Virus record (IMG/VR): IMGVR_UViG_3300030107_006644
Location: 62,001-126,000 of that record
Direction: 5' to 3' (one strand)
DNA: 64,000 nt
Part shown: positions 31,527 to 41,591 of the stretch, piece by piece
Position numbering within the stretch: position 1 is the first letter of the stretch
Layout: each line of letters starts with the position of its first letter
The notes under the pieces: model-generated
What the model saw: only the letters and a program-made list of their open reading frames with translations
Told to the model about the DNA's origin: nothing
Databases searched by the model: none
Program-made: the position numbers and the translations under genes

Positions 31527-34500
31527 ATGTCAAACACACTTTCAGAATTAAGAGGCCGGTTTAACTTCGTATCTCCGGGTATTTACGTTAACGAGGTCGA
31601 CCAGTCCCAGCCATCGGTTGAGCGGTTGGCCCAAGGCCCGGTTATTATTGGCCGATTCCCCAAGGGCCCCATGATGCGCCCCGTGGTTGTTAAATCCAAA
31701 GCACAATTTATGAGCCTTTTTGGCGCTCCACACCCCGGCGGAGCCGGCGGCGATCCGTGGAGAGGCGATGCTCATGGCGGCCCAACGTATGCCGCATATG
31801 CTGCTGAGGCGCATTTACATTCTGCTGGCGGTACTGCTCCTGCTACAATTTTTAGACTTGCAGGCGAGAAGGCTTCTGGAGCAACTGGCAACTATTCCGC
31901 TGCCGGCTGGACAACCCGAGCTAGTTCTGGTGCCCAAGTTAATCCGAATGCTGCTGTCGCTAGCAACGGTGGGGCTTACGGACTGTTCGTCATGGGTCCC
32001 CCAATGGCCGGCCTAGGCAGCGACTCGCTTAACTTCGGAAGCCTTGGGTGGCAAGGCAGCCACGCCGTCACCGGCACGCTAGCCGCTGTCTTTTATCTTA
32101 CCGAGGGCTCGATTCAGCTTGTTGGTAACGGATATAGTCCCGATGGCACCGTGGGGGATCAGACAGCCAGTCTTGGCTCTCTCATTAGGTCTCACTCGCA
32201 TGTTGGCGGCACCTATTATGATGGTGTCGGTGCGGATGCAGCCCCGTGCACATTTAAATTTAGGGTTTTAAACTCTGCGGGAACTGAAGTTTCGAATCAT
32301 ATTGCATCCTTCATCCCAAGTGCCGATCTGGACTCCTACTCCGGCATAGCCGGCGCACGCGATTCGTTCAACTGCGATCCAACCAAGACCAACGCCAGCA
32401 TCAATACTTCGGCGAACACCAAGACTTACTGGCTTGGCGAGACGTATCAGCAAAGTGTCAAGGACATGGTTTCGCTGACCGGATCCAACGCTGCGGATGC
32501 GGGCCAGCAATGGGGAGTGCTTGTAGCACTACACGACGGTGCCAATAACTTTGCAGATCATCGCGAAGATTGGCAAAACCCTTCAACAGGCTGGTTCTTT
32601 TCGCAGGACCAAGGTGCGTATGCAAGCTATCATGTAAATAACATGGAGAAATTGTTTAAGTTTCACGCGCTTGATCACGGCGAATGGGCCCAAAATAACT
32701 TGCGCATTACGATTAGCAACATTGAGCAATATACCAGCAGCAAGTATAAATATGGAAGTTTCGATGTATCAGTTGAGTCGCTTTTCGGAAGAGAGAGTAG
32801 CGTATCGGTTATCGAAACCTTTTCAAATTGTAACTTAGATAGAAATTCGCCCAACTACATTTGTAAGAAGATTGGTGATAGATACTTAGAGTGGAATTCG
32901 GATGCCAATACCGGCGGGCAACATATTGACAAGGGTAGCGAACAAAACAAATCTAGCTACATTCGTGTAGAAGTTTCGGATCTAGTGAAGTACGGCGATC
33001 CCTCGACACTCCTGCCTTGGGGTGTTTATGGGCCCTCGCGCCTTCGTTCTTGGCATGCCAACTCTGGCTCGTCTGGATTCTTTTCTAGCTCTGCCGGCGT
33101 ATTCAACCCGAGTGAGGTGTCGTGTGAAGGTGTCGCTGGATTCTATGCCACGGGAGATGCTTCGGGAATGCCCGCAACGCACCCCGTTGACTCTACCGTT
33201 TCTGGTGTCGCTGCAACCGCAACAATTACTTTTACTGGCAGTCAAACTGTCAACAGGCTTATAACCATTACATCAGCGGACGGTACCGCGAGAACCTATA
33301 CAGGTAAAACTACAGGAACTCCGGGCTCCAACACCTTTGATTGTAACAATGGTGCCGCAGTTTGCGCGACATCGTTAATGGCTGCGATAAACAACGCCGC
33401 CGGCCATTCGGGCAAAATAACTGCTACGAACCCATCATCGGGCGTCGTACTGTTAACACAAGATGTGGTCGGAATAGCCGGAAACACGACTATAACTAAC
33501 GATTTCGACGCCGCAACTGTGCCGGCAGGATTCTCCGGCGGCTCTGCAGGTGAAATCTGGTTCGGTGCCAGTGGAGCTTCACAGATGAACGGCGCCAACT
33601 TTAAGATTGAATACCCCAGTGTTCGCTTGGTAGCTACAGCCTCTATTGGCGGATCCGGCGATAGATATCACAATAGATTTGGTATCGACTGGTCAGACTA
33701 TACTTTATCAGGCGGAAACCACAAGATGACAAGCACCAATGGTGAAGCAGAACTCAGTGTTGTTGATGCGTTACGCCGACTTCCTAAAGCGGTCGCTGGT
33801 AATAGCCCAGATGATTCTGGCAATGTTGAATACTCTTGGGTGTTCACTCTGGATGACATCGTTTGTAGTAACTCTACCGATACCTCTCCAATTGGCACCT
33901 ATACTTCCGGCTCTCGCGCCGGAGGTACAAGCTATACGGCAGCTAGCGGATCGTCTGCTCTTCTTGATATCGGAGATGGCAAGGGATTCCACCAGTTCAG
34001 CACATGTCTAGCTGGCGGACACGATGGTCTCGATATCTGCGAGAGAGAGCCTTTCAGAAACACGCTTTTGGATGACGCTAGCGGAGACAAAACCGTTATT
34101 GCCATGTATAATACGATGGTCCGTGCGCTAGATACCGTTAAGGATCCGGAGTATGTTGAGTGTAATATTATAACTGCCCCCGGTCTTACGGAAAACAACC
34201 TTACCGACATGTTGATTTCGCATTGCGAAAGTCGCGGTGACGCGTTGGGTATCATTGATGTTGACGGCGGATATATTCCGGGCGGTACTGAGCAGGCCAC
34301 AATCTCGCGAGGCTCCGTAAAGGCTGTCTGGCAGAATATGCGAGACCGCACACTGGACTCAAGCTATGGCTGCGCCTACTATCCGTGGGTTCAAGTTAGA
34401 AGTTCTCAAAACAAGGATAGCGTTTGGGTTCCACCCTCTGTCGTAGCCTTGGGAACAATGGCGTCCTCAACAAAGGCTTCGAAAGTCTGGTTTGCTCCCG

Positions 34501-35021
34501 CAGGGTTTACTCGCGGCGGATTGGATTCTGTCGGAACGCGCGCAGGCTCAGCAGGCCTTAAGGTAATGGATGTTAGAGATCGCCTTACTTCCACACAGAG
34601 AGATAGAATGTACGAGAATCGGATTAATCCAATTGCCAAGTTCCCAGCAGAAGGAATCGTGGTGTTCGGACAAAAGACTTTACAAGTTCCGGCCTCCGCC
34701 TTGGACCGGATCAACGTTCGCAGACTTCTGCTGCACGTCAAGAAGCAGACCTCTATCATTGCTGCTACAACCATGTTTAGCCCGAACGATGCAACTACTT
34801 GGGCCGCTTTCAAGGGGTCGATGGATTCGTTCTTAGACGACATTAAGAGCGAGTACGGCCTTCAAGATTACAAGGTTGTGTTAGATGAGACTACCACGAC
34901 GGACGACTTGATCGATGCCAACGTTCTATACGCTCAAGTATACCTGAAGCCGACCAAGGCAATCGAATTTATCCTTGTCGACTTTATCGTTACAAGCCAA
35001 GGAGCATCTTTCGACGATTAA
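31527..35021 (+). CDS. gp18: contractile tail sheath protein
   Basis: VSPGIYVNEVD, YYPWV, WFAPAGFTRG, INPIAKF..EGIVVFGQKTL, RINVRRLL, KPTKAIEFI. Confidence 0.96.
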   Translation: MSNTLSELRGRFNFVSPGIYVNEVDQSQPSVERLAQGPVIIGRFPKGPMMRPVVVKSKAQFMSLFGAPHPGGAGGDPWRGDAHGGPTYAAYAAEAHLHSAGGTAPATIFRLAGEKASGATGNYSAAGWTTRASSGAQVNPNAAVASNGGAYGLFVMGPPMAGLGSDSLNFGSLGWQGSHAVTGTLAAVFYLTEGSIQLVGNGYSPDGTVGDQTASLGSLIRSHSHVGGTYYDGVGADAAPCTFKFRVLNSAGTEVSNHIASFIPSADLDSYSGIAGARDSFNCDPTKTNASINTSANTKTYWLGETYQQSVKDMVSLTGSNAADAGQQWGVLVALHDGANNFADHREDWQNPSTGWFFSQDQGAYASYHVNNMEKLFKFHALDHGEWAQNNLRITISNIEQYTSSKYKYGSFDVSVESLFGRESSVSVIETFSNCNLDRNSPNYICKKIGDRYLEWNSDANTGGQHIDKGSEQNKSSYIRVEVSDLVKYGDPSTLLPWGVYGPSRLRSWHANSGSSGFFSSSAGVFNPSEVSCEGVAGFYATGDASGMPATHPVDSTVSGVAATATITFTGSQTVNRLITITSADGTARTYTGKTTGTPGSNTFDCNNGAAVCATSLMAAINNAAGHSGKITATNPSSGVVLLTQDVVGIAGNTTITNDFDAATVPAGFSGGSAGEIWFGASGASQMNGANFKIEYPSVRLVATASIGGSGDRYHNRFGIDWSDYTLSGGNHKMTSTNGEAELSVVDALRRLPKAVAGNSPDDSGNVEYSWVFTLDDIVCSNSTDTSPIGTYTSGSRAGGTSYTAASGSSALLDIGDGKGFHQFSTCLAGGHDGLDICEREPFRNTLLDDASGDKTVIAMYNTMVRALDTVKDPEYVECNIITAPGLTENNLTDMLISHCESRGDALGIIDVDGGYIPGGTEQATISRGSVKAVWQNMRDRTLDSSYGCAYYPWVQVRSSQNKDSVWVPPSVVALGTMASSTKASKVWFAPAGFTRGGLDSVGTRAGSAGLKVMDVRDRLTSTQRDRMYENRINPIAKFPAEGIVVFGQKTLQVPASALDRINVRRLLLHVKKQTSIIAATTMFSPNDATTWAAFKGSMDSFLDDIKSEYGLQDYKVVLDETTTTDDLIDANVLYAQVYLKPTKAIEFILVDFIVTSQGASFDD

Positions 35022-35071: not shown

Positions 35072-35752
35072 ATGGCTAAATTTTGGAGAAACGCAACAGC
35101 AGAGCCCAAGAGAGCATATCGATGGTTTATTACCTTTGGCGGCCTTGGGACCAACACGTCAGGTGGGAACGCCGGGGCCTCGGACAATCCCGCTGTGGCA
35201 ACCACAGACTTAACTTATGCGGTTAAGCGTGTTGACAAGCCATCAATCAGTATTTCTGAAACAGAGCACACCTTTATTAATCACAAGTTTTACTATCCCG
35301 GCCGAGTCGACTGGTCTGACGTTTCTGTCAGTTTTGTTGATGTCGTCGGTGCGGGTTCTGCAACTGATAGTGTTCTTGTTGCACTGGCCGCAGCAGGGTA
35401 TGACGTGCCTTCGAACGCTAGTGCACCCGCGTCAAACACCGACACGGCGGGTGCCGCGAATTTTACCACCGTCAGCAAGCATTCGATGTCGACAGCTCTC
35501 GGCTCTGTTATAATTACTCAAGTTAATTCCGAAGGTATACCCGTTGAGACGTGGACCTTGAACAACCCTTGGATCAAAAGCATCAATGTTGGTTCTCTCG
35601 ACTACGGCAGTGAGGAACTTCTATCGGTCGATATCAGCTTGAGGTACGACTGGGCTACTTTTGCAAGACCATCAGGCGCCAAAGGTGTCGCCCCCGACGA
35701 TACCGATACTCCAGATGCAGGCGGCGGAGAACTCTTCACCCTTTGGGAATAA
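35072..35752 (+). CDS. gp19: tail tube protein
   Basis: EPKRAYRW, YYPGRVDW, ETWTLNNPWIKSINVGSLDY, LRYDWA; follows the sheath gene. Confidence 0.9.
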   Translation: MAKFWRNATAEPKRAYRWFITFGGLGTNTSGGNAGASDNPAVATTDLTYAVKRVDKPSISISETEHTFINHKFYYPGRVDWSDVSVSFVDVVGAGSATDSVLVALAAAGYDVPSNASAPASNTDTAGAANFTTVSKHSMSTALGSVIITQVNSEGIPVETWTLNNPWIKSINVGSLDYGSEELLSVDISLRYDWATFARPSGAKGVAPDDTDTPDAGGGELFTLWE

Positions 35753-35841: not shown

Positions 35842-36708
35842 ATGGCTAGAAATAATGAGTTAAGAACCGGCGCCAGTGCGGCCGGAGACTCTACGGGTGC
35901 AGTATCTGAAGCGGTTGCAAATGCAAGCCCGCTGTCTTTTGTTGTGCCAACGGAGTTTGTTGAGTTGCCAAGCAGGGGGAGATACTATCCAGAAGATCAC
36001 CCGCTATGCAATCAGGAAGTGGTAGAGATTCGCCACATGACGGCAAAGGATGAAGATATATTAACATCAGCATCGCTCTTGAAGAAAGGCTTGGCAATTG
36101 ATAGGCTGATCGCTAGCATATTGGTGGATAAAAACATAAGTCCAGATACGCTACTCATCGGAGATAGGAATGCCATTCTGCTACAAGCTAGAATCCACGC
36201 ATACACATCTAATTATGGTGTAACTGTTGGCTGTCCAGCATGCGGAGAGTCTTCAGAGCAAACTTTCGACTTAGCAGAGTGCGGCTTAAACTATGGAGAA
36301 GATTTGGGTGCTTTAACGGATGATATTTCGGGCCCAGATTCACAGAACATGTTTGATATCAGGCTACCCGTCACACAAGTCGTGGCTAAAGTTAGACTTC
36401 TTAATGCTGGCTTAGAGAAATCTATTGCAAATGAACAGGCAAGAAGGCAGAAGATGAAGCTCCCAGAAGCACCGGTGACCTTTCAACTGAAGCAAATTAT
36501 TTACTCGCTAAACGGCGAAACAGATCGAAACCAAGTTAACACCTTCATCGAGTCGATGCCGACTGCAGATACGCATTATTTGCGCGCATCATACAACAAG
36601 TTGGTGCCAAATGTGGATATGACGCAGAGCTTTACGTGTCCAAACTGTGAGAAGGAGTCACAACTGGAGGTTCCGTTTACTGCGGAGTTTTTTTGGCCTA
36701 ACCGATGA
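35842..36708 (+). CDS. baseplate hub/tail assembly chaperone (T4 gp26-like)
   Basis: VELPSRG..Y, MTAKDEDIL, GDRNAIL, CPAC and CPNC, ends FFWPNR. Confidence 0.85.
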   Translation: MARNNELRTGASAAGDSTGAVSEAVANASPLSFVVPTEFVELPSRGRYYPEDHPLCNQEVVEIRHMTAKDEDILTSASLLKKGLAIDRLIASILVDKNISPDTLLIGDRNAILLQARIHAYTSNYGVTVGCPACGESSEQTFDLAECGLNYGEDLGALTDDISGPDSQNMFDIRLPVTQVVAKVRLLNAGLEKSIANEQARRQKMKLPEAPVTFQLKQIIYSLNGETDRNQVNTFIESMPTADTHYLRASYNKLVPNVDMTQSFTCPNCEKESQLEVPFTAEFFWPNR

Positions 36709-36712
36709 CTAC

Positions 36713-36916
36713 ATGGGATCTGTATACGAGCACTTTTTTGCTCTAAAGCAGCACGGTGGCTGGAGTTTTATTGAGATGTACAATTTGCCGGTTTCTCTGC
36801 GAAGATGGTTCGTGGAAAGGCTAGCACAACACTTTGAAGAGCAGAATGAGGCCATGAAAAAAGCAAACACTGGCTCCAAAAGCTCTTCTTCCACAAAATA
36901 TGGTCCTCAAGGCTAA
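36713..36916 (+). CDS. tail chaperone downstream module (gp51-like), probably expressed as a frameshift fusion
   Basis: FFALKQHGGWSFIEMYNLPVSLRRWFVERL; no RBS; frame open upstream through the T7 run at 36688. Confidence 0.75.
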   Translation: MGSVYEHFFALKQHGGWSFIEMYNLPVSLRRWFVERLAQHFEEQNEAMKKANTGSKSSSSTKYGPQG

Positions 36917-36943: not shown

Positions 36944-36973
36944 AAGCTGGGATAATTCCCAGCTTTTCTTTTT
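36944..36973 (+). terminator. rho-independent terminator
   Basis: AAGCTGGG-ataatt-CCCAGCTT followed by TTCTTTTT. Confidence 0.8.
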
Positions 36974-37003
36974 GTCAGAACTATTTACTTTAAGGTGATA
37001 TAA

Positions 37004-37351
37004 ATGCGTAATCTTAACGAAGACAAGATGGTACCAATCGTACTTGACTTGAATGCTGCAAAATCGGGCAATCTGCAAGAAGGTGGTCCGTTGCGTATTT
37101 TGGGCTGGGCTGTCGAAAACATTTTAAAGAAGATGTTCGGTTCAGGAGGGGCCGTTCCGGTTGAAGTTCGTGGAACCCCGGGACAGGTTAACTCTTTTAC
37201 AAAGGTTCTGGCGTCAGAGAAAAACTACATGCAGAATTGGCAAAAATACGGTTTAGATGATCCGAAAACATACAAAAGCAAAGGCTTTTTGCAGAAGTCA
37301 ATCAATGGCTTCGAGAGAGCCACAGGTCTCAGGTGGCCATTTTCAAGATAG
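37004..37351 (+). CDS. hypothetical protein
   Basis: AAGGTG RBS, late motif at 36980; ends FERATGLRWPF. Confidence 0.7.
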   Translation: MRNLNEDKMVPIVLDLNAAKSGNLQEGGPLRILGWAVENILKKMFGSGGAVPVEVRGTPGQVNSFTKVLASEKNYMQNWQKYGLDDPKTYKSKGFLQKSINGFERATGLRWPFSR

Positions 37352-37364
37352 GGGGTAAACATCA

Positions 37365-39701
37365 ATGAGCGGTGGAGGCGGTGGAGATCCCGGAGATATA
37401 CCAAGGTACGAAGAGCTAATAGAAGTAATCCAGCAGAGTGCGGATGAAGCGGACAGAGCCGCAGCGGCTTATGAGAGAATGTCGCAAACGTTGTCTAGCT
37501 CTTCTATGAAGGCTGAATATTTTGCGAAAGCAAACGAGCAGAACGTAAAGGCTATGGAAGCCAGCATTCAGGCTACTCAGCTTATGATCGAGGCTCTTGC
37601 CGAACAGGGTCAGGAAACCGCCGAACTAGAGCAAAAGCTTGCTGCCTACGAAGCTAGATTAAAGTCGTTAAAGGGAGAGACAGAAGCTGTTAATGCGCTC
37701 AATCAAGGCGCTAAAGACGGATTTAGAAGTTTGGCCGGCATGATTGGTATGTCGACAGACTCCAGTCAAAACTTTGTTTACCAGTTAGGGCTTATGACCA
37801 ATTCCTTGGTCGCAAACAGAAAAGAATTGATCCAAGCGCCGGCTATATTTAATGGTTTTGCCAGCGCCATGAACTCGGCAGCTAGCTGGATCGAACAAGG
37901 CTTTATTGTGTTGTTGAAGAAGGGGATAGATATAGTTCTCGACATGAACAGTGCCCAAATGACCTTTAATCGAACGATGGGCATCGCGGTAAGCCAACAA
38001 CAGCGATACGCAGATAGTATTAAGAGGACATCTAACTCGCTCTTGCTAGCCGGTGTCTCTGTTAGAGAGTCAGGTGAGGCGTGGAATCAGCTGTACACTA
38101 GCGTTACTCGTTTTTCGCATATGACTACCGAGATGCAAGAAGATTTGATGAGGACCACAGCTTTGCTGGAAAGAAACGGAATGGCCGCTCAACAAACCAC
38201 GCAATCTGTTGAAATGTTGTCAAGAGTTTATGGAATGACCGGAATGGAAGCAGCCCAGCAGATGCGAAATTTAAGAGATTTTGCAGAAGCTGCTCGAATC
38301 CCGCCGGAAATCATTTCTCGCGACTTTGCAGAGGCCAGTAGACAACTAGCTGTACATGGCAAGAGAATGGTGTCGGTATTTAAAGATTTGGAACTAGCGG
38401 CCAAAGGTACTGGTATCGGAATTCAACAGCTATTGTCGATTACTTCGCGATTTGATACGTTTGAGGGAGCCGCTGAAGCTGCCGGTCGATTGAACGCTAT
38501 TTTAGGCAGAGACTTGTTCAATTCGCTTGACATGTTAATGACGGTAGATCCGACAGAGAGATTTCGTCGCTTACGTCAAGGTATTTTGCAAGCTGCTGGA
38601 AGCTTTCAGCAGTTAAGTTATTATGAAAAGCGCGCGATTGCAGACGCAGCAGGGTTAGAAGACGTAGCTCAGCTAGCAATGCTTATGAGCGGTAGGTTAG
38701 AACAGAGTGCCGGCGCAATGGGCCAAAATGCAATGTCAGCCGAAGACCTAGCAAAGAGAACCGAAAATCTCGCTTCACTGCAAGAGAAATTTGCCAATAC
38801 GTTGTCTGCTCTTGCGCCGCAATTCCATGCGTTCATGGACTGGCTTGTAAACATGACCTCAAATACGAGAGAGTTCAAAGAATGGATCGAGAGTTGGATC
38901 CAGACTGGAATCAAGTGGTATGGAGGACTTAAGATAGGCGCTGCGATATTGTCTCTTTATAGGCTGAGGCTAATGGCGGTTACTGCTGCAGCAGGACAAG
39001 CTACAATGGCCACGCGAGGTCTTTCTTTGGCTATGGTAGGCGCCGGAGGACTGGGAGTCATGGGCCTCATGTGGGCAACTAAAAAGGTCAATGAAGCTTT
39101 TAATGAGCCCGGCTCGCCGTCCTTTTTGCAGAGCTTAGGGATCATAGGGCGAGAAGCCGGCAAATCGGCTACCCCACTCAGAAGCTTGGCATCAAGCATG
39201 GGGGAGATCGGCGCCCAAGTGGGAGCGATGCAGGTAGCCAGCAATCTTTCTATGGCTTTGCGCTCGCTTGAACAGGTTGATTCAACTGGCATAAGAGGAA
39301 TGGCAGCAGCGATTAGAGACGTAGCTTCAGCCATGAACGATATCGATCCAAATAAGAGTTTAGAGTTCCGAGCCACCATACAGGCCTTTGGCACGTCACA
39401 GATAGCACAGGCTGTTGCTGCAGCCAACAGTTTGCGAGATTCTGATGTGAACAGGATCAAAGATCTGGTTACACAGGCAAATGAGCTTGCCGCAGCCAGT
39501 AGAACTTCTGAAGGAGATCAGTTAAACGCTCTAGTTAGATCTGTAGCGCAGTTGGCTCAAGTGCAAGCCGGCGCCGGCGCAGCAGGCGGTGGTTATGCCG
39601 GCCCAAGCAAGGTCGAATCAGTGTTGAAGCTCGACGGTCGGACACTCGACAGGCACATTGTTAATGTTGTAAGCAGAAGATTCGGCAGCAGAGAAAGGTA
39701 G
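37365..39701 (+). CDS. tape measure protein
   Basis: Ala/Gly/Met-rich helical protein, FDTFEGAAEAAGRLNAILG, hydrophobic segments, C-terminal LKLDGRTL; after the chaperones. Confidence 0.8.
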   Translation: MSGGGGGDPGDIPRYEELIEVIQQSADEADRAAAAYERMSQTLSSSSMKAEYFAKANEQNVKAMEASIQATQLMIEALAEQGQETAELEQKLAAYEARLKSLKGETEAVNALNQGAKDGFRSLAGMIGMSTDSSQNFVYQLGLMTNSLVANRKELIQAPAIFNGFASAMNSAASWIEQGFIVLLKKGIDIVLDMNSAQMTFNRTMGIAVSQQQRYADSIKRTSNSLLLAGVSVRESGEAWNQLYTSVTRFSHMTTEMQEDLMRTTALLERNGMAAQQTTQSVEMLSRVYGMTGMEAAQQMRNLRDFAEAARIPPEIISRDFAEASRQLAVHGKRMVSVFKDLELAAKGTGIGIQQLLSITSRFDTFEGAAEAAGRLNAILGRDLFNSLDMLMTVDPTERFRRLRQGILQAAGSFQQLSYYEKRAIADAAGLEDVAQLAMLMSGRLEQSAGAMGQNAMSAEDLAKRTENLASLQEKFANTLSALAPQFHAFMDWLVNMTSNTREFKEWIESWIQTGIKWYGGLKIGAAILSLYRLRLMAVTAAAGQATMATRGLSLAMVGAGGLGVMGLMWATKKVNEAFNEPGSPSFLQSLGIIGREAGKSATPLRSLASSMGEIGAQVGAMQVASNLSMALRSLEQVDSTGIRGMAAAIRDVASAMNDIDPNKSLEFRATIQAFGTSQIAQAVAAANSLRDSDVNRIKDLVTQANELAAASRTSEGDQLNALVRSVAQLAQVQAGAGAAGGGYAGPSKVESVLKLDGRTLDRHIVNVVSRRFGSRER

Positions 39702-39736: not shown

Positions 39737-40519
39737 ATGGCTTTACTTGTACCAAAATTAATAACGCTGAAGTGCAACTTGGAAGTTGTCCACCCGGCAC
39801 CGTTCGGATGGGATAGTACAACCAGAACCATAGCGAAAACTCACGGCACAAGCGAGGCTTTTAAAAGGTTTCCTTATGGTCTAGACTATTCCGACGAGGA
39901 TACATATGGCGAAACAACTCACTCAAAAACTTTAGAAAAAATGAGCCAAGGCGCCGAGCAAGACAACTCAGAAGAACCTATTGGCACAAATGTAACTGAC
40001 GAACTCAAAGTGACTTATGAAGCTGGTACTTTTGGCAACGGCGACCCGCACCAATCGACTTACGCAAATACCACAGGCCTGCACCTTTCTTTCAAACATA
40101 TCTCCTCTGGACTGACTGTGTTCTTTAAAGCTTTTCTAACTGATATGAGCGATAACTATTCTATTACGTGGAGTGAAGACGCCGCTATAGGCAGAATGGA
40201 TCCCCTTGTATCTTATCAGGGGATCAGAAGAACGGTTTCTATAACATGGGACCTGCCATCGTGGGATGTCAACGAGGGGGTGGAGAATTTACAGAAGTGC
40301 ACTAACTTGTTTAAAATGTTGTACCCCATGTATCAGGAGCACGGCCACTCTTTGTCGATGTTTTCTCCGCCCATGTTGGGAATTAAGATGTCTAATTTGG
40401 TGGCCTTTCATGACAGTCCTTTTGGCGGTTCCGGAGGATATCTCACAGGTACAGTTCAGGGGTTTGACTTTTCTCCCAACTTAGATGTTGGGTTTTGGGA
40501 TCCGAATGTAGATGAGTAG
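39737..40519 (+). CDS. baseplate/tail-tube initiator-like protein, circularly permuted
   Basis: FKAFLTDMSDNYSITW...GRMDP...RTVSITWDLP, LYP, PPMLGIKMSNL. Confidence 0.7.
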   Translation: MALLVPKLITLKCNLEVVHPAPFGWDSTTRTIAKTHGTSEAFKRFPYGLDYSDEDTYGETTHSKTLEKMSQGAEQDNSEEPIGTNVTDELKVTYEAGTFGNGDPHQSTYANTTGLHLSFKHISSGLTVFFKAFLTDMSDNYSITWSEDAAIGRMDPLVSYQGIRRTVSITWDLPSWDVNEGVENLQKCTNLFKMLYPMYQEHGHSLSMFSPPMLGIKMSNLVAFHDSPFGGSGGYLTGTVQGFDFSPNLDVGFWDPNVDE

Positions 40520-40532
40520 GAGATTAACTTAA

Positions 40533-41591
40533 ATGGGACAAGAAACAACCCCGCTTTTCTCGACAACGGTCATGAATCAGACGGGCTCTTCAGGGACAGC
40601 CGAGACCAATTATGCGAACAACAAAGGCTTTTACATAACGTTTAATAGCATGTTCGTTGCAGGCCGCGTGGACTTTAAAGCTTATCTCAACCAATATCAT
40701 GATAACTTTACCAGCGACTGGTCATCCGAAATACCATACGGCCGCGTGGACAGTATCAAAACCTTTAATAGAACAACTAGAATGATAGATATATCATTTT
40801 CAATACCAGCATATACAGCCGAAGAGGCCATACAAAACTTGGCAAAAGTTTCCGCCTTGATCAAGATGGTTTACCCTTCATATGAGAACAGGGCGTGGGG
40901 AACCACAAAAGGTCACACCGGCACCGGTGATGACGCACTCTCGACCACAGTATTGGCATCCAGTCGCACGACAAACGCATCTAACGATAGGTTCTGCTTG
41001 TCGGCGCCTCCACTAATAACGGTCAAGTTCGCAAACCTAATTAAGTCGATCCGACCAGATACCACTGCCTTACCCGGCGGGCCCGAGTTGGAAAAGACAT
41101 TTCTGGAAGGCAAAATGGACGGTATAATATCTGCAGTCACCAACTTATCTGTCAACCCGCGCGTCGACGCCGGCTTTTTTCACCTTAAAGATGGTACAGG
41201 GTGGATGTACCCCAAGGTGATAGATGTTGCTGTACAGTTTAATGTTCTTCATCAGGTGTCTCCGGGAATAGCTGCTGCTGATTTTACAACTGCAGCCGCC
41301 GCAGCTACTTATGGAGATCTTTATGGAGTCGGATACGGTAAAGTCGACGGCACCAAGGGAGATCCGGCCTATTCTGAGACTCCAGCACTTTCAATTGCTG
41401 GGGCGAGAGCGGCCCTTGAGGCAGCTGGAAGGAACAAGGCAATGGTTACAAACCCTGATGTCGCTGGGCCCACCCAAACCCCCCCTCCCGGCGTTTCAAC
41501 TGCGGCCGGCACTACTCCCGGCGGACACAGCACCGATGACTATGTGCAAATTGCCGGCGACAAAAACGAAGACGGTCAGGGCAGCCCCTAG
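40533..41591 (+). CDS. baseplate/tail-tube initiator-like protein (paralogue of the previous gene)
   Basis: FKAYLNQYHDNFTSDW...GRVD...RMIDISFSIP, VYP, PPLITVKFANL, YPKVIDVAVQFNVLH. Confidence 0.7.
   Translation: MGQETTPLFSTTVMNQTGSSGTAETNYANNKGFYITFNSMFVAGRVDFKAYLNQYHDNFTSDWSSEIPYGRVDSIKTFNRTTRMIDISFSIPAYTAEEAIQNLAKVSALIKMVYPSYENRAWGTTKGHTGTGDDALSTTVLASSRTTNASNDRFCLSAPPLITVKFANLIKSIRPDTTALPGGPELEKTFLEGKMDGIISAVTNLSVNPRVDAGFFHLKDGTGWMYPKVIDVAVQFNVLHQVSPGIAAADFTTAAAAATYGDLYGVGYGKVDGTKGDPAYSETPALSIAGARAALEAAGRNKAMVTNPDVAGPTQTPPPGVSTAAGTTPGGHSTDDYVQIAGDKNEDGQGSP

What the first reader, a model, noticed from the sequence alone, without database searches (positions are those of the whole stretch)
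36680..36916. Probable programmed +1 (or -2) frameshift in the tail chaperone at a T7 run
The gp26-like ORF ends GAG TTT TTT TGG CCT AAC CGA TGA (EFFWPNR*), with T7 at 36688-36694. The +1 frame reads TTT TTT GGC CTA ACC GAT GAC TAC ATG (FFGLTDDYM) and runs directly into the gp51-like module, whose ATG has no RBS. The location between tube and tape measure matches lambda G/GT and Mu chaperone frameshifts, which are -1 and -2 respectively. A Phe-Phe slip in a T4-like gp26/gp51 pair would link the two systems.
Basis: partly seen in the sequence, partly recalled or inferred. Interest (0 to 1): 0.65.

Follow-up and report, generated by a model that had tools for sequence, protein, structure and literature searches.

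The report
Programmed frameshift in tail chaperone gene
A marine phage most likely makes two versions of its tail-assembly chaperone from one gene, by letting some ribosomes slip one base forward at a short, strictly conserved TTT-TGG motif, which ties the T4 proteins gp26 and gp51 to the frameshifted chaperone pair known from phage lambda.

Summary
The 288-aa gp26-like ORF (35842-36708, PF12322) ends GAG TTT TTT TGG CCT AAC CGA TGA, and the +1 frame is open from 36623 to 36916.

Comparison strongly supports a programmed +1 ribosomal frameshift:
- All 79 readable related viral contigs (42-71% protein identity) carry YTT TGG CCT at the same place, with the downstream module always in the +1 frame.
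- In 62 non-redundant copies the slip codon is TTT 59, CTT 3, TTC 0. The next +1 codon is GGC in 62 of 62, while ordinary Phe and Gly codons nearby vary freely.
- The window's ATG (36713) is Ile or another residue in 27 of 62.
- Residues upstream of that ATG (G, L, Y) are conserved with synonymous changes.
- A +1-frame stop lies as close as five codons before the motif.
- The T7 run itself is not conserved, which argues against -2 slippage and transcriptional slippage.
- No RNA structure was found.

The added 73-aa helical module is homologous to cyanophage gp51 and, through it, to the C-terminal extension of T4 gp51. T4-like cyanophages join the same two modules by a -1 shift at T_TTT_TTC, and T4 uses two paralogous genes.

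No protein or RNA data exist. I rate it a new variant of the lambda G/GT principle.

The parts
35842..36708 (+). 0-frame ORF of 288 aa: the gp26-like tail or hub assembly chaperone, the short 'G-like' product
   Evidence: PF12322 T4_baseplate at 2.8e-16 and phrog_150 'baseplate hub' at 5.3e-19. It is the only PF12322 gene in the 205.5-kb genome. The AlphaFold model has pLDDT 85. Its three best VIA-align matches are the three solved tail assembly chaperones, at Z 4.3-5.3.
36688..36699 (+). Shift motif TTT TTT TGG CCT. The invariant core YTT TGG CCT lies at 36691-36699.
   Evidence: Present in all 79 readable related loci. In 62 non-redundant copies the first Phe codon is TTT 57 / TTC 5 and the slip codon is TTT 59 / CTT 3 / TTC 0. 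The bases T, GGC and CT are invariant.
36691..36694 (+). Proposed slip: the P-site tRNA on TTT (36691-36693) re-pairs on 36692-36694, so the next codon read is GGC (36695-36697) instead of TGG
   Evidence: Inferred. TTT_T and CTT_T both allow +1 re-pairing on TTT. TTC never occurs at this codon, although TTC is the commoner Phe codon at control positions (35 of 58 and 34 of 61). A +1-frame stop five codons upstream in L041, L043, L044, L048, L072 and L075 bounds the shift window to about 23 nt.
36695..36916 (+). +1-frame extension of 73 codons plus stop: the gp51-like 'T-like' module. The fusion product is 284 + 73 = 357 aa (P0003).
   Evidence: Conserved peptide GL..xY[MI]..VYE.FF.LK.HGGWSF.EAYNLP...R.WF. 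hhalign against cyanophage gp51 gives E = 1.2e-6. The model has three helices, pLDDT 83.
36706..36708 (+). 0-frame stop TGA, four codons after the slip codon
   Evidence: Sequence. In relatives the 0-frame tail after WP is mostly 1-3 codons (7 in L017) and is not conserved.
36713..36715 (+). ATG in the +1 frame: the apparent start of a 67-aa ORF, not a conserved start
   Evidence: Codon usage in 62 relatives: ATG 35, ATA 11, ATC 7, ATT 6, AGA 2, other 1. No SD-like motif upstream. The Tyr codon just before it is invariant as an amino acid, with TAC 31 / TAT 31.
36944..36975 (+). Terminator-like hairpin and T tract, 28 nt after the stop of the +1 module
   Evidence: 9-bp stem with 5 G-C pairs, a 4-nt loop and a T-rich tail. 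This is a consensus match only.
35072..35752 (+). Tail tube gene (context)
   Evidence: phrog_4542 'tail tube' at 4e-24. PF06841 gp19 gives a weak match.
37365..39701 (+). Tape-measure-like gene of 778 aa (context)
   Evidence: Assigned by position and length. The homologous position is annotated as tape measure in phages immuto, HSE3 and LIS04. No family hit here.

Best explanation
The gp26-like gene is a tail (hub and tape-measure) assembly chaperone gene that is decoded in two ways.

Most ribosomes read TTT TTT TGG CCT AAC CGA TGA and release a 288-aa protein.

A fraction pause with peptidyl-tRNA(Phe) on the second TTT (36691-36693) while the A site holds the sense codon UGG. The P-site tRNA slips one base forward onto the identical UUU (36692-36694), the ribosome then reads GGC CTA ACC.., and continues for 73 codons. 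This gives a 357-aa fusion with the junction ..TAEFF-GLTDDYM.., whose C-terminal three-helix module corresponds to gp51.

By analogy with lambda gpG/gpGT and T4 gp26/gp51, both forms would act as non-virion chaperones of the tape measure and hub, and the extension would add a second contact.

What is shown: the conserved motif, the frame offset, coding selection in the +1 frame upstream of any start codon, and the homology of the modules.

What is inferred: the ribosomal +1 P-site mechanism, its efficiency, and the chaperone function.
For: 1. All 79 readable loci at 42-71% identity keep YTT TGG CCT and a +1-frame module. So do Microcystis phage Mel-JY01 and Flavobacterium phage immuto, at 30-34% identity.
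2. Synonymous constraint in 62 non-redundant copies:
- Slip codon: TTT 59 / CTT 3 / TTC 0, against TTC 35 / TTT 23 and TTC 34 / TTT 27 at two control Phe codons.
- First +1 codon: GGC 62 of 62, against GGT 28 / GGA 16 / GGC 12 / GGG 5 and GGC 23 / GGA 13 / GGT 12 / GGG 9 at two invariant control Gly codons.
3. The +1 frame is under protein-level selection before any start codon:
- Leu is invariant, with CTA 49 / CTC 9 / CTG 4.
- Tyr is invariant, with TAC 31 / TAT 31.
- The overlapping 0-frame tail varies in both sequence and length.
4. The ATG is replaced in 27 of 62 copies. Five loci have no ATG in the module. The window's ATG has no SD-like motif.
5. +1-frame stops five codons upstream exclude an upstream +1 start and bound the shift site.
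6. The genome has a single PF12322 gene, whereas T4 has two:
- gp26 is the domain alone.
- gp51 is the domain (residues 1-201, 3.9e-52) plus a 48-aa extension.
- That extension aligns with the cyanophage module, which aligns with the window module.
7. No in-frame fusions were found among the 120 best relatives listed (of 3379 hits), nor in a search for the module within 196-625-aa proteins. The two-product layout therefore appears to be maintained.
8. In metagenome assemblies, contigs of other phages align to the window only at 36665-36716. Depth there is 580 against 6.7 in run X2.
9. Both CUU_U and UUU_U are known +1-prone P-site contexts (PRFect paper, PMC10885494).
Against: - There is no direct evidence. 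No RNA run holds the sequence, there is no proteomics, and the phage is uncultured.
- In-frame TTT TGG is not avoided elsewhere in the genome (22 observed, 20.4 expected). So either the motif alone is weak and efficiency is low, or an unrecognised context element is needed.
- The A-site codon is an ordinary sense codon. No stop, no demonstrably rare codon and no conserved SD-like stimulator was found.
- No RNA structure was found. RNAalifold predicts 0 pairs and the window fold has z = +0.47.
- In the window itself the 0-frame TGA lies 4 nt before an ATG, so termination-reinitiation could add a separate 67-aa product.
- The invariance of GGC-CT can be partly explained by dual coding (WP in frame 0, GL in frame +1) rather than by a signal.
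Confidence: 0.8

Rival explanations
1. There are two separate genes. The downstream module is made on its own as a 67-aa protein starting at ATG 36713, by translational coupling or reinitiation after the TGA four bases upstream. This matches how gp51 is annotated in public cyanophage records.
For: The window has an ATG 4 nt after the 0-frame stop. 35 of 62 relatives keep ATG there. Databases annotate the homologous cyanophage gp51 as a separate CDS.
Against: - 27 of 62 relatives have ATA, ATC, ATT, AGA or another codon at that position, and five loci have no ATG in the module.
- The six +1-frame codons before it are under protein-level selection. G, L and Y are invariant, with synonymous variation.
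- There is no SD-like motif.
- This model does not explain the strict TTT/CTT and GGC codon choice at the junction.
- It may still occur alongside frameshifting in this particular phage.
Confidence: 0.08
2. A -2 ribosomal slip on the T7 run. The P-site tRNA(Phe) moves back two bases, giving a fusion with an extra Phe (..EFFFGL..).
For: -2 lands in the same frame as +1. In the T7 context TTT re-pairs perfectly two bases back. 54 of 62 copies have the full run (57 TTT-first minus the 3 CTT copies).
Against: In the TTC TTT TGG variants (L018-20, L032-33, L052, L072, L075; 5 of 62 non-redundant copies), a -2 move puts tRNA(Phe) on TCT, a central mismatch. The layout is nevertheless kept. +1 explains every variant with one rule.
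Confidence: 0.05
3. Transcriptional slippage. RNA polymerase drops one U in the U7 run, so that a fraction of the mRNAs carries the fusion in a single frame.
For: A homopolymer of 7 T is present in most copies, and the first Phe codon is biased to TTT (57 of 62).
Against: The run is cut to 4 T (TTC TTT T) or 3+3 (TTT CTT T) in 8 of 62 copies without loss of the arrangement. More distant +1 relatives use TTC TTT C or other short motifs. It could not be tested directly, because no RNA reads exist.
Confidence: 0.05
4. An artefact or a decaying gene. Either an assembly indel in a homopolymer splits one ordinary ORF, or this is a pseudogene.
For: Homopolymers are prone to sequencing error.
Against: The same frame break occurs in 79 independent contigs and in two cultured phages. 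An independent assembly (run X2, record 9) has the same T7, and no indel is reported at 36688-36694. No intact in-frame version was found.
Confidence: 0.01

Closest known systems
Phage lambda gpG / gpGT tail assembly chaperones (-1 frameshift), and the conserved 'G-T' frameshift of long-tailed phages
   Same: - The gene sits between the tube (major tail) gene and the tape measure gene.
- A short product and a C-terminally extended product share their N-terminal part.
- The second ORF has no conserved start.
- The shift site lies a few codons before the 0-frame stop.
- The best structural matches of the gp26-like model are the solved tail assembly chaperones 3FGX, 3KLU and 2OB9.
- The function is described in PMC5009743.
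   Different: - The direction is +1, not -1.
- There is no X XXY YYZ heptamer.
- The protein family is different (PF12322, about 280 aa with two chaperone-like halves and Cys pairs, against about 130 aa).
- Fold similarity is weak (Z 4.3-5.3).
- Binding partners are untested.
Phage T4 gp26 and gp51 (hub assembly chaperones)
   Same: The window ORF belongs to the same Pfam family as both. T4 gp51 is the domain plus a 48-aa C-terminal extension, and that extension aligns with the cyanophage gp51 module. The window fusion has the same architecture. Both T4 proteins are listed as hub assembly chaperones, and gp51 is absent from the virion (PMC3004832).
   Different: T4 encodes the short and long forms as two diverged, divergently transcribed genes with no frameshift. 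The window phage has one gene. A direct profile match between the window module and T4 gp51 was not obtained, so the link is transitive.
gp26 / gp51 of T4-like cyanophages and relatives (Kyanoviridae, Pelagibacter phage Mosig, Sinorhizobium phage phiM12)
   Same: The same two modules are joined at the same Phe-Phe position at the end of the gp26 domain. The module profiles are homologous.
   Different: - The module lies in the -1 frame, after a canonical T_TTT_TTC (or T_TTT_TTT) heptamer. This was invariant in all rows printed for about 80 loci, and a -1-frame stop sits directly before the heptamer in some.
- Public records annotate two genes or omit gp51: 60 of 492 records were sampled by product name, and two were examined in detail.
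prfB (release factor 2) +1 frameshift, CUU UGA C
   Same: The P-site tRNA slips +1 onto UUU. The CTT TGG variant (3 of 62) has the same CUU_U slip. In the window, GGAG lies 3 nt before the slip codon, the same spacing as the prfB Shine-Dalgarno stimulator (sequence; prfB details are from general knowledge and PMC10885494).
   Different: The A-site codon is a sense codon (UGG), not a stop. The GGAG is present in only 8 of 62 copies (the codon before the Phe pair is GAG in 8). There is no autoregulatory logic.
Yeast Ty1 +1 frameshift, CUU AGG C (from general knowledge)
   Same: A seven-base linear signal with no RNA structure. The P-site Leu or Phe tRNA slips +1, and the next +1 codon is GGC.
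   Different: Ty1 depends on a rare Arg codon (AGG) in the A site. Here the A-site codon is UGG, and whether it is slowly decoded in the unknown host is unknown.
Archaeal myovirus HSTV-2 tail assembly chaperone (annotated joined CDS, 'very likely +1')
   Same: It is a precedent for a +1 shift in a myovirus chaperone gene lying between tube and tape measure.
   Different: Its chaperone has no Pfam match and is not PF12322. It has a different host domain and a different site.

Membership tests
Pfam PF12322 T4_baseplate (T4 gp26 / gp51 family) | HMM match above the curated cut-off, covering most of the model | tested here: met
   60.3 bits against a cut-off of 24.5, model positions 12-219 of 219. 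Confirmed on the genome.
gp51-type C-terminal module ('baseplate hub assembly catalyst') | Sequence or profile similarity of the +1 module to gp51 | tested here: met
   - phrog_634 at E = 0.005 (weak).
- hhalign of 39 window-clade modules against 29 cyanophage gp51 modules: probability 90.7%, E = 1.2e-6, 54 columns.
- Cyanophage profile against T4 gp51: residues 210-244, E = 6.9e-4.
- The direct window-clade profile against T4 gp51 found nothing.
G/GT-type frameshifted tail assembly chaperone system | Position between the tube or major tail gene and the tape measure gene | tested here: met
   Order tube, gp26-like, module, 115-aa ORF, 778-aa ORF. Same order in Mel-JY01, immuto, HSE3, LIS04, SP-15 and phiM12.
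G/GT-type frameshifted tail assembly chaperone system | Second ORF overlaps the end of the first in another frame, has no conserved start, and the offset is conserved | tested here: met
   The +1 offset holds in all 79 readable loci. The ATG is replaced in 27 of 62 copies.
G/GT-type frameshifted tail assembly chaperone system | Canonical -1 slippery heptamer X XXY YYZ | tested here: not met
   The base before the in-frame TTT TTT is G (A or C in some relatives), and the A-site codon is TGG. The -1 frame closes after 14 codons. The shift here is +1, so this is a variant and not a canonical member.
G/GT-type frameshifted tail assembly chaperone system | Chaperone fold (the spiral fold of HK97 gp13, YqbN and Rbstp2171) | tested here: inconclusive
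   - Of 48,161 chains, the top three are 3FGX (Z 5.3, model residues 32-130), 3KLU (Z 4.8, residues 167-255) and 2OB9 (Z 4.3). The unrelated rows that follow score Z 3.0 or less.
- PMC9603447 names all three as tail assembly chaperones.
- The Z values are low by the tool's own yardstick, and Foldseek found nothing.
G/GT-type frameshifted tail assembly chaperone system | Both products bind the tape measure, the extension binds the tube or hub protein, and neither is in the virion | not testable with these tools
   One complex prediction (module plus tube protein) gave no verdict. It counts neither for nor against.
prfB-type +1 frameshift | P-site CUU or UUU followed by U | tested here: met
   TTT_T in 59 and CTT_T in 3 of 62 copies. 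TTC never occurs.
prfB-type +1 frameshift | Stop codon in the A site and a conserved SD-like stimulator 3 nt upstream | tested here: not met
   The A-site codon is TGG in all copies. GGAG at -7 to -4 is present in the window but in only 8 of 62 copies.
Transcriptional slippage site | Conserved long homopolymer | tested here: not met
   The run is interrupted in 8 of 62 non-redundant copies (TTC TTT T or TTT CTT T), and the arrangement is kept.

The most novel reading that the evidence does not exclude
The T4 gp26/gp51 family is the long-missing T4-type counterpart of lambda G/GT, and its Phe-Phe junction is a recoding point that evolution has resolved in three ways:
- a +1 slip at YUU_UGG_C (this marine clade, Mel-JY01 and immuto; other short +1 motifs in Firmicute phages);
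- a -1 slip at U_UUU_UUC/U (hundreds of cyanophage, pelagiphage and rhizobiophage genomes, where gp51 is annotated as a separate gene or missed);
- gene duplication with an in-frame long copy (T4 itself).

In addition, UUU_UGG_C would be a bacterial +1 signal that needs no stop codon, no SD-like stimulator and no RNA structure.
Probability: 0.55. Interest if true: 0.8.

Novelty: new variant of a known kind. Interest (0 to 1): 0.68.

Why it matters
Frameshift-linked chaperone pairs are regarded as nearly universal in long-tailed phages, with T4 stated as the exception (review PMC5009743). This locus and its relatives indicate that the T4-type hub chaperones gp26 and gp51 are that missing pair.

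- The window phage has one gene and a +1 shift.
- T4-like cyanophages have the same two modules and a -1 shift.
- T4 has two paralogous genes.

If confirmed, three things follow:
1. [quoted passage not shown]
2. It corrects the annotation of several hundred public phage genomes.
3. It offers a compact natural +1 signal with a sense codon in the A site for studying how ribosomes keep frame.

It also shows that the need for a fixed ratio of short to long chaperone is conserved while the direction of the slip is not.

Tried and rejected
- **Stimulatory RNA structure.** RNAalifold on 38 diverse sequences (-24 to +96) predicted no pairs. The window fold over 36660-36800 is no more stable than shuffled sequence (z = +0.47).
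- **RNA evidence.** No RNA run holds the window.
- **Natural in-frame fusions.**
  - None among the 120 best hits to the fusion. All are 265-300 aa and cover 71-80% of it.
  - None in a search with the module region restricted to 196-625-aa proteins.
- **Solved structures.** The sequence search found no hit. Foldseek against the PDB found nothing for the gp26-like model or the module.
- **Complex prediction.** Module plus tube protein gave no answer (score 0.00). This is not evidence either way.
- **Bacterial relatives.** A scan of bacterial genomes with the SP-15 homologue found nothing. The weak DUF6760 match of the module (E = 0.002, below cut-off) was not followed further.
- **Avoidance of the motif elsewhere in the genome.** Not seen (22 in-frame TTT TGG against 20.4 expected).
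- **Literature.** Ten searches found no paper describing a gp26/gp51 frameshift. Subscription journals are not covered.
- **Not used.** The large representative-protein search.
- **Genetic code.** The four-letter word TGGC=G was only a way to write the +1 product by reference. No alternative genetic code is claimed.
Full report
**1. The observation**

- The ORF 35842-36708 (288 aa) ends GAG TTT TTT TGG CCT AAC CGA TGA, with seven T at 36688-36694.
- The +1 frame is open from 36623 to 36916 and reads ..FFGLTDDYMGSVYEH.. The ATG is at 36713.
- The -1 frame closes after 14 codons.
- The ATG has no Shine-Dalgarno-like motif in the 21 bases before it. Nine of 13 neighbouring genes do have one.

The window is the structural module of a 205,517-bp viral genome that CheckV rates as complete.
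- It carries terminase, portal and major head protein genes.
- They are followed by sheath (31527-35021), tube (35072-35752), the gp26-like ORF, the small ORF, a 115-aa ORF and a 778-aa tape-measure-like ORF.
- The metagenome runs that hold it are marine.

**2. Identity of the two modules**

The 288-aa protein is a member of PF12322 (T4_baseplate, 60.3 bits against a cut-off of 24.5) and of phrog_150 'baseplate hub'. It is the only such gene in the genome.

T4 has two members of this family:
- gp26 (208 aa) is the domain alone.
- gp51 (249 aa) is the whole domain (residues 1-201, 3.9e-52) plus a 48-residue C-terminal extension.

The window's +1 module matches gp51 only weakly on its own (phrog_634 'baseplate hub assembly catalyst', E = 0.005; DUF6760 below cut-off). 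Profiles give a stronger link:
- A profile of 39 such modules matches a profile of 29 cyanophage gp51 modules at 90.7% probability (E = 1.2e-6, 54 columns).
- The cyanophage profile aligns to T4 gp51 residues 210-244, that is, to the extension (E = 6.9e-4).
- The direct comparison of the window-clade profile with T4 gp51 found nothing, so this link is transitive.

**3. Comparative evidence for recoding**

Eighty related viral contigs (42-71% identity) were fetched. One runs off its contig end before the motif.

*The motif and the frame*
- All 79 others have TTY TTT TGG CCT or TTT CTT TGG CCT a few codons before the 0-frame stop, and in all of them the module lies in the +1 frame.
- Microcystis phage Mel-JY01 (34% identity) has the same TTT TTT TGG CCT.
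- Flavobacterium phage immuto (30%) has TTT CTT TGG CCT.

*Codon choice in 62 non-redundant copies*

| Position | Usage | Control positions |
|---|---|---|
| Slip codon | TTT 59, CTT 3, TTC 0 | Two conserved Phe codons 15 codons downstream: TTC 35 / TTT 23 and TTC 34 / TTT 27 |
| First +1 codon | GGC 62 of 62 | Two invariant Gly codons downstream use all four synonyms |

*Selection in the +1 frame before any start*
- The +1-frame Leu is invariant (CTA 49, CTC 9, CTG 4).
- The Tyr that lies between the 0-frame stop and the ATG is invariant (TAC 31, TAT 31).
- The overlapping 0-frame tail after Trp-Pro varies in sequence and in length: mostly one to three residues, seven in one locus.
- Selection therefore acts on the +1 reading upstream of any possible start.

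*No conserved start*
- The 'start' codon is ATG in only 35 of 62 copies. The rest are ATA 11, ATC 7, ATT 6, AGA 2 and one other.
- Five loci have no ATG anywhere in the module.
- In six loci a +1-frame stop lies five codons before the T run. This excludes an upstream +1 start and confines the shift to about 23 bases.

*No intact single-frame version*
- A search with the fusion returned 3379 relatives. The 120 best are all 265-300 aa and cover only the first 71-80% of the fusion.
- A search for the module inside 196-625-aa proteins found nothing.

*Independent assemblies*
- Metagenome assemblies from other samples keep the T7 run without indels.
- Dozens of contigs from other phages align to the window only at 36665-36716, which marks this stretch as an island of nucleotide conservation.

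**4. Mechanism**

One rule fits every variant: the P-site tRNA on YUU slips one base forward onto UUU. The ribosome then reads GGC instead of UGG.
- UUU_U re-pairs perfectly.
- CUU_U is the slip used in prfB.
- UUU is reported among the most +1-prone P-site codons after CUU (PMC10885494).

The alternatives fit less well:
- A -2 slip would re-pair well on the full T7 run, but would put tRNA(Phe) on TCT in the TTC TTT TGG variants.
- Transcriptional slippage needs a homopolymer, which 8 of 62 copies lack.

I therefore favour +1, while noting that in the T7-bearing majority the other two cannot be excluded without a junction peptide or RNA data.

No stimulator was identified:
- RNAalifold predicts no conserved pairs, and the window sequence folds no better than shuffles.
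- GGAG lies 3 nt before the slip codon in the window, the prfB spacing, but only 8 of 62 copies have it.
- In-frame TTT TGG is not avoided elsewhere in the genome (22 observed, 20.4 expected). Only this site has TGG CCT after it.

Efficiency is thus probably low, as for lambda, or it depends on context I could not recognise.

In this genome GGC is twice as frequent as TGG (28.9 against 14.3 per 1000 codons). The phage also carries a tRNA-Gly(GCC) gene. Both would favour capture of the +1 codon, but this is inference.

**5. Function**

T4 gp26 and gp51 are listed as hub assembly chaperones, and gp51 is required for assembly but absent from the particle (PMC3004832).

Structure predictions:
- The AlphaFold model of the 288-aa protein is confident (pLDDT 85.2).
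- Foldseek found nothing for it.
- The exhaustive aligner ranked three chains first out of 48,161:
  - 3FGX: Z 5.3, model residues 32-130.
  - 3KLU (YqbN): Z 4.8, residues 167-255.
  - 2OB9 (HK97 tail assembly chaperone): Z 4.3.
- After a fourth chain of unknown function at Z 4.1, the remaining rows score Z 3.0 or less.
- A published comparison names those three as the solved tail assembly chaperones (PMC9603447).
- The Z scores are low, so this is supportive rather than proof. It suggests that the gp26 domain consists of two chaperone-like halves, each followed by a Cys-x-x-Cys pair.
- The module is predicted as three helices (pLDDT 83) with no structural match.

A predicted complex of the module with the tube protein gave no verdict.

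The chaperone role, and the idea that the extension supplies a second contact as lambda's T domain does, remain inference from position and homology.

**6. Beyond the window**

*T4-like cyanophages and relatives*
- In Pelagibacter phage Mosig, P-SSM2 and about 80 related contigs, gp26 ends NNT TTT TTC followed by one or more codons and a stop.
- The gp51 module always lies in the -1 frame.
- In some loci a -1-frame stop sits directly before the heptamer.
- Sinorhizobium phiM12 has T_TTT_TTT.
- This is a canonical -1 slippery heptamer at the homologous Phe-Phe position.
- A tblastn of the module finds 492 phage records. In the 60 sampled, the products are named as two genes or gp51 is missing. 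P-SSM2 and phiM12 carry two unjoined CDS.

*Other clades*
- Thornevirus, Bacillus HSE3, Streptococcus GXN1, a megaphage and several uncultured contigs have the module in the +1 frame after TTT TTT, TTC TTT C or similar.
- In one small group (L177, L180, L181) a Phe slip is poor or impossible. A CCC_A slip is the only candidate I see there.
- Stenotrophomonas phage RAS14 uses -1 on T_TTT_TTT.

*Tree*
- A quick tree (unfinished careful search, SH-aLRT only) separates the +1 clades from a group of Kyanoviridae plus T4 gp26 and gp51 (99).
- It pairs the two T4 proteins (85), but both sit on long branches, so this is tentative.

**7. Comparison with the literature, and novelty**

[quoted passage not shown] It also mentions a likely +1 case in the archaeal myovirus HSTV-2 (PMC5009743).
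- The HSTV-2 chaperone is annotated as a joined CDS, but it has no Pfam match.
- None of ten literature searches found a description of a gp26/gp51 frameshift. The library lacks most subscription journals, so prior mention cannot be excluded.

I therefore rate this as a new variant of a known kind. The principle (frameshift-linked short and long tail chaperones) is known. What appears to be new is the protein family, the +1 signal with a sense codon in the A site, and the link to T4.

**8. Verdict**

- Confidence that a frameshifted fusion is made is about 0.8.
- Within that, +1 P-site slippage is the most likely route.

What is missing is any direct RNA or protein evidence. The decisive experiments are simple and are listed above.

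Noticed in passing
L086-L169, L182, L183 (Kyanoviridae and relatives): In T4-like cyanophages, Pelagibacter phage Mosig and Sinorhizobium phiM12, gp26 ends at an invariant T_TTT_TTC (or T_TTT_TTT) heptamer, and the gp51 module lies in the -1 frame. 492 phage records hold the module. Sampled annotations show two separate genes or no gp51 at all.
   Followed up: partly
L085:5480-6229 (T4 gene 51) and L085:4803-5429 (gene 26, minus strand): T4 gp51 is a complete PF12322 domain (residues 1-201) plus a 48-aa tail that aligns with cyanophage gp51. T4 thus encodes the short and long chaperone forms as two paralogous genes instead of one frameshifted gene.
   Followed up: partly
window 35842-36708 (model of P0002): The predicted fold has two halves (about residues 32-130 and 167-255). 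Each resembles a solved tail assembly chaperone, and each is followed by a Cys-x-x-Cys pair (C131/C134 and C265/C268). This may be one zinc site bridging an internal duplication.
   Followed up: partly
window 36666-36671: The Glu codon 21 nt before the Phe pair is GAG in 50 of 62 relatives and never GAA, which creates GGAGGT (a perfect Shine-Dalgarno core) 19 nt upstream of the slip codon. It is absent in one subclade (GTA AAT GTG..). The spacing seems too long for a prfB-like effect. Unexplained.
   Followed up: partly
window 36944-36975: A terminator-like hairpin (9-bp stem) with a T tract lies 28 nt after the module's stop, between the chaperone gene and the 115-aa ORF and tape measure gene.
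   Followed up: no
G000:C1:195888-199744 (outside the window): The phage genome carries a tmRNA-like gene and four tRNA genes: Arg(tct), Leu(taa), Lys(ttt) and Gly(gcc). tRNA-Gly(GCC) reads GGC, the invariant first codon of the +1 frame.
   Followed up: no
window 36651-36731 (reads tool, runs X1-X3): Contig depth rises from about 7-17 to 108-580 only over about 50 nt around the shift site, because contigs of many other phages in the same samples match just this stretch at 85% or more.
   Followed up: partly
L177, L180, L181; L004, L172, L176, L179; L170, L171; L001; L173: More distant PF12322 genes also have the module out of frame. It is +1 after TTC TTT C, TTT TTT C/A or AAC TTT C. In L181 it follows TTA TTC AAT CCC A, where no Phe slip is possible and CCC_A is the only candidate. 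It is -1 after T_TTT_TTT in Stenotrophomonas phage RAS14.
   Followed up: partly
window 39737-40519 and 40533-41591: The two ORFs after the tape-measure-like gene (260 and 352 aa) have no family match but share a similar stretch by eye (FKAFL..D.YS..WSED / FKAYL..D.F.SDWSSE). They may be paralogues.
   Followed up: no
window 31527-35021: The sheath protein is unusually long (1164 aa). Only residues from about 540 onward match sheath families, so the N-terminal half is an unassigned insertion or extension.
   Followed up: no
window 37004-37351: A 115-aa ORF with a good Shine-Dalgarno motif lies between the chaperone and the tape-measure-like gene and has no family match. Relatives also have one or two small ORFs at this place (71 aa in Mel-JY01, 139 aa in phiM12).
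   Followed up: no
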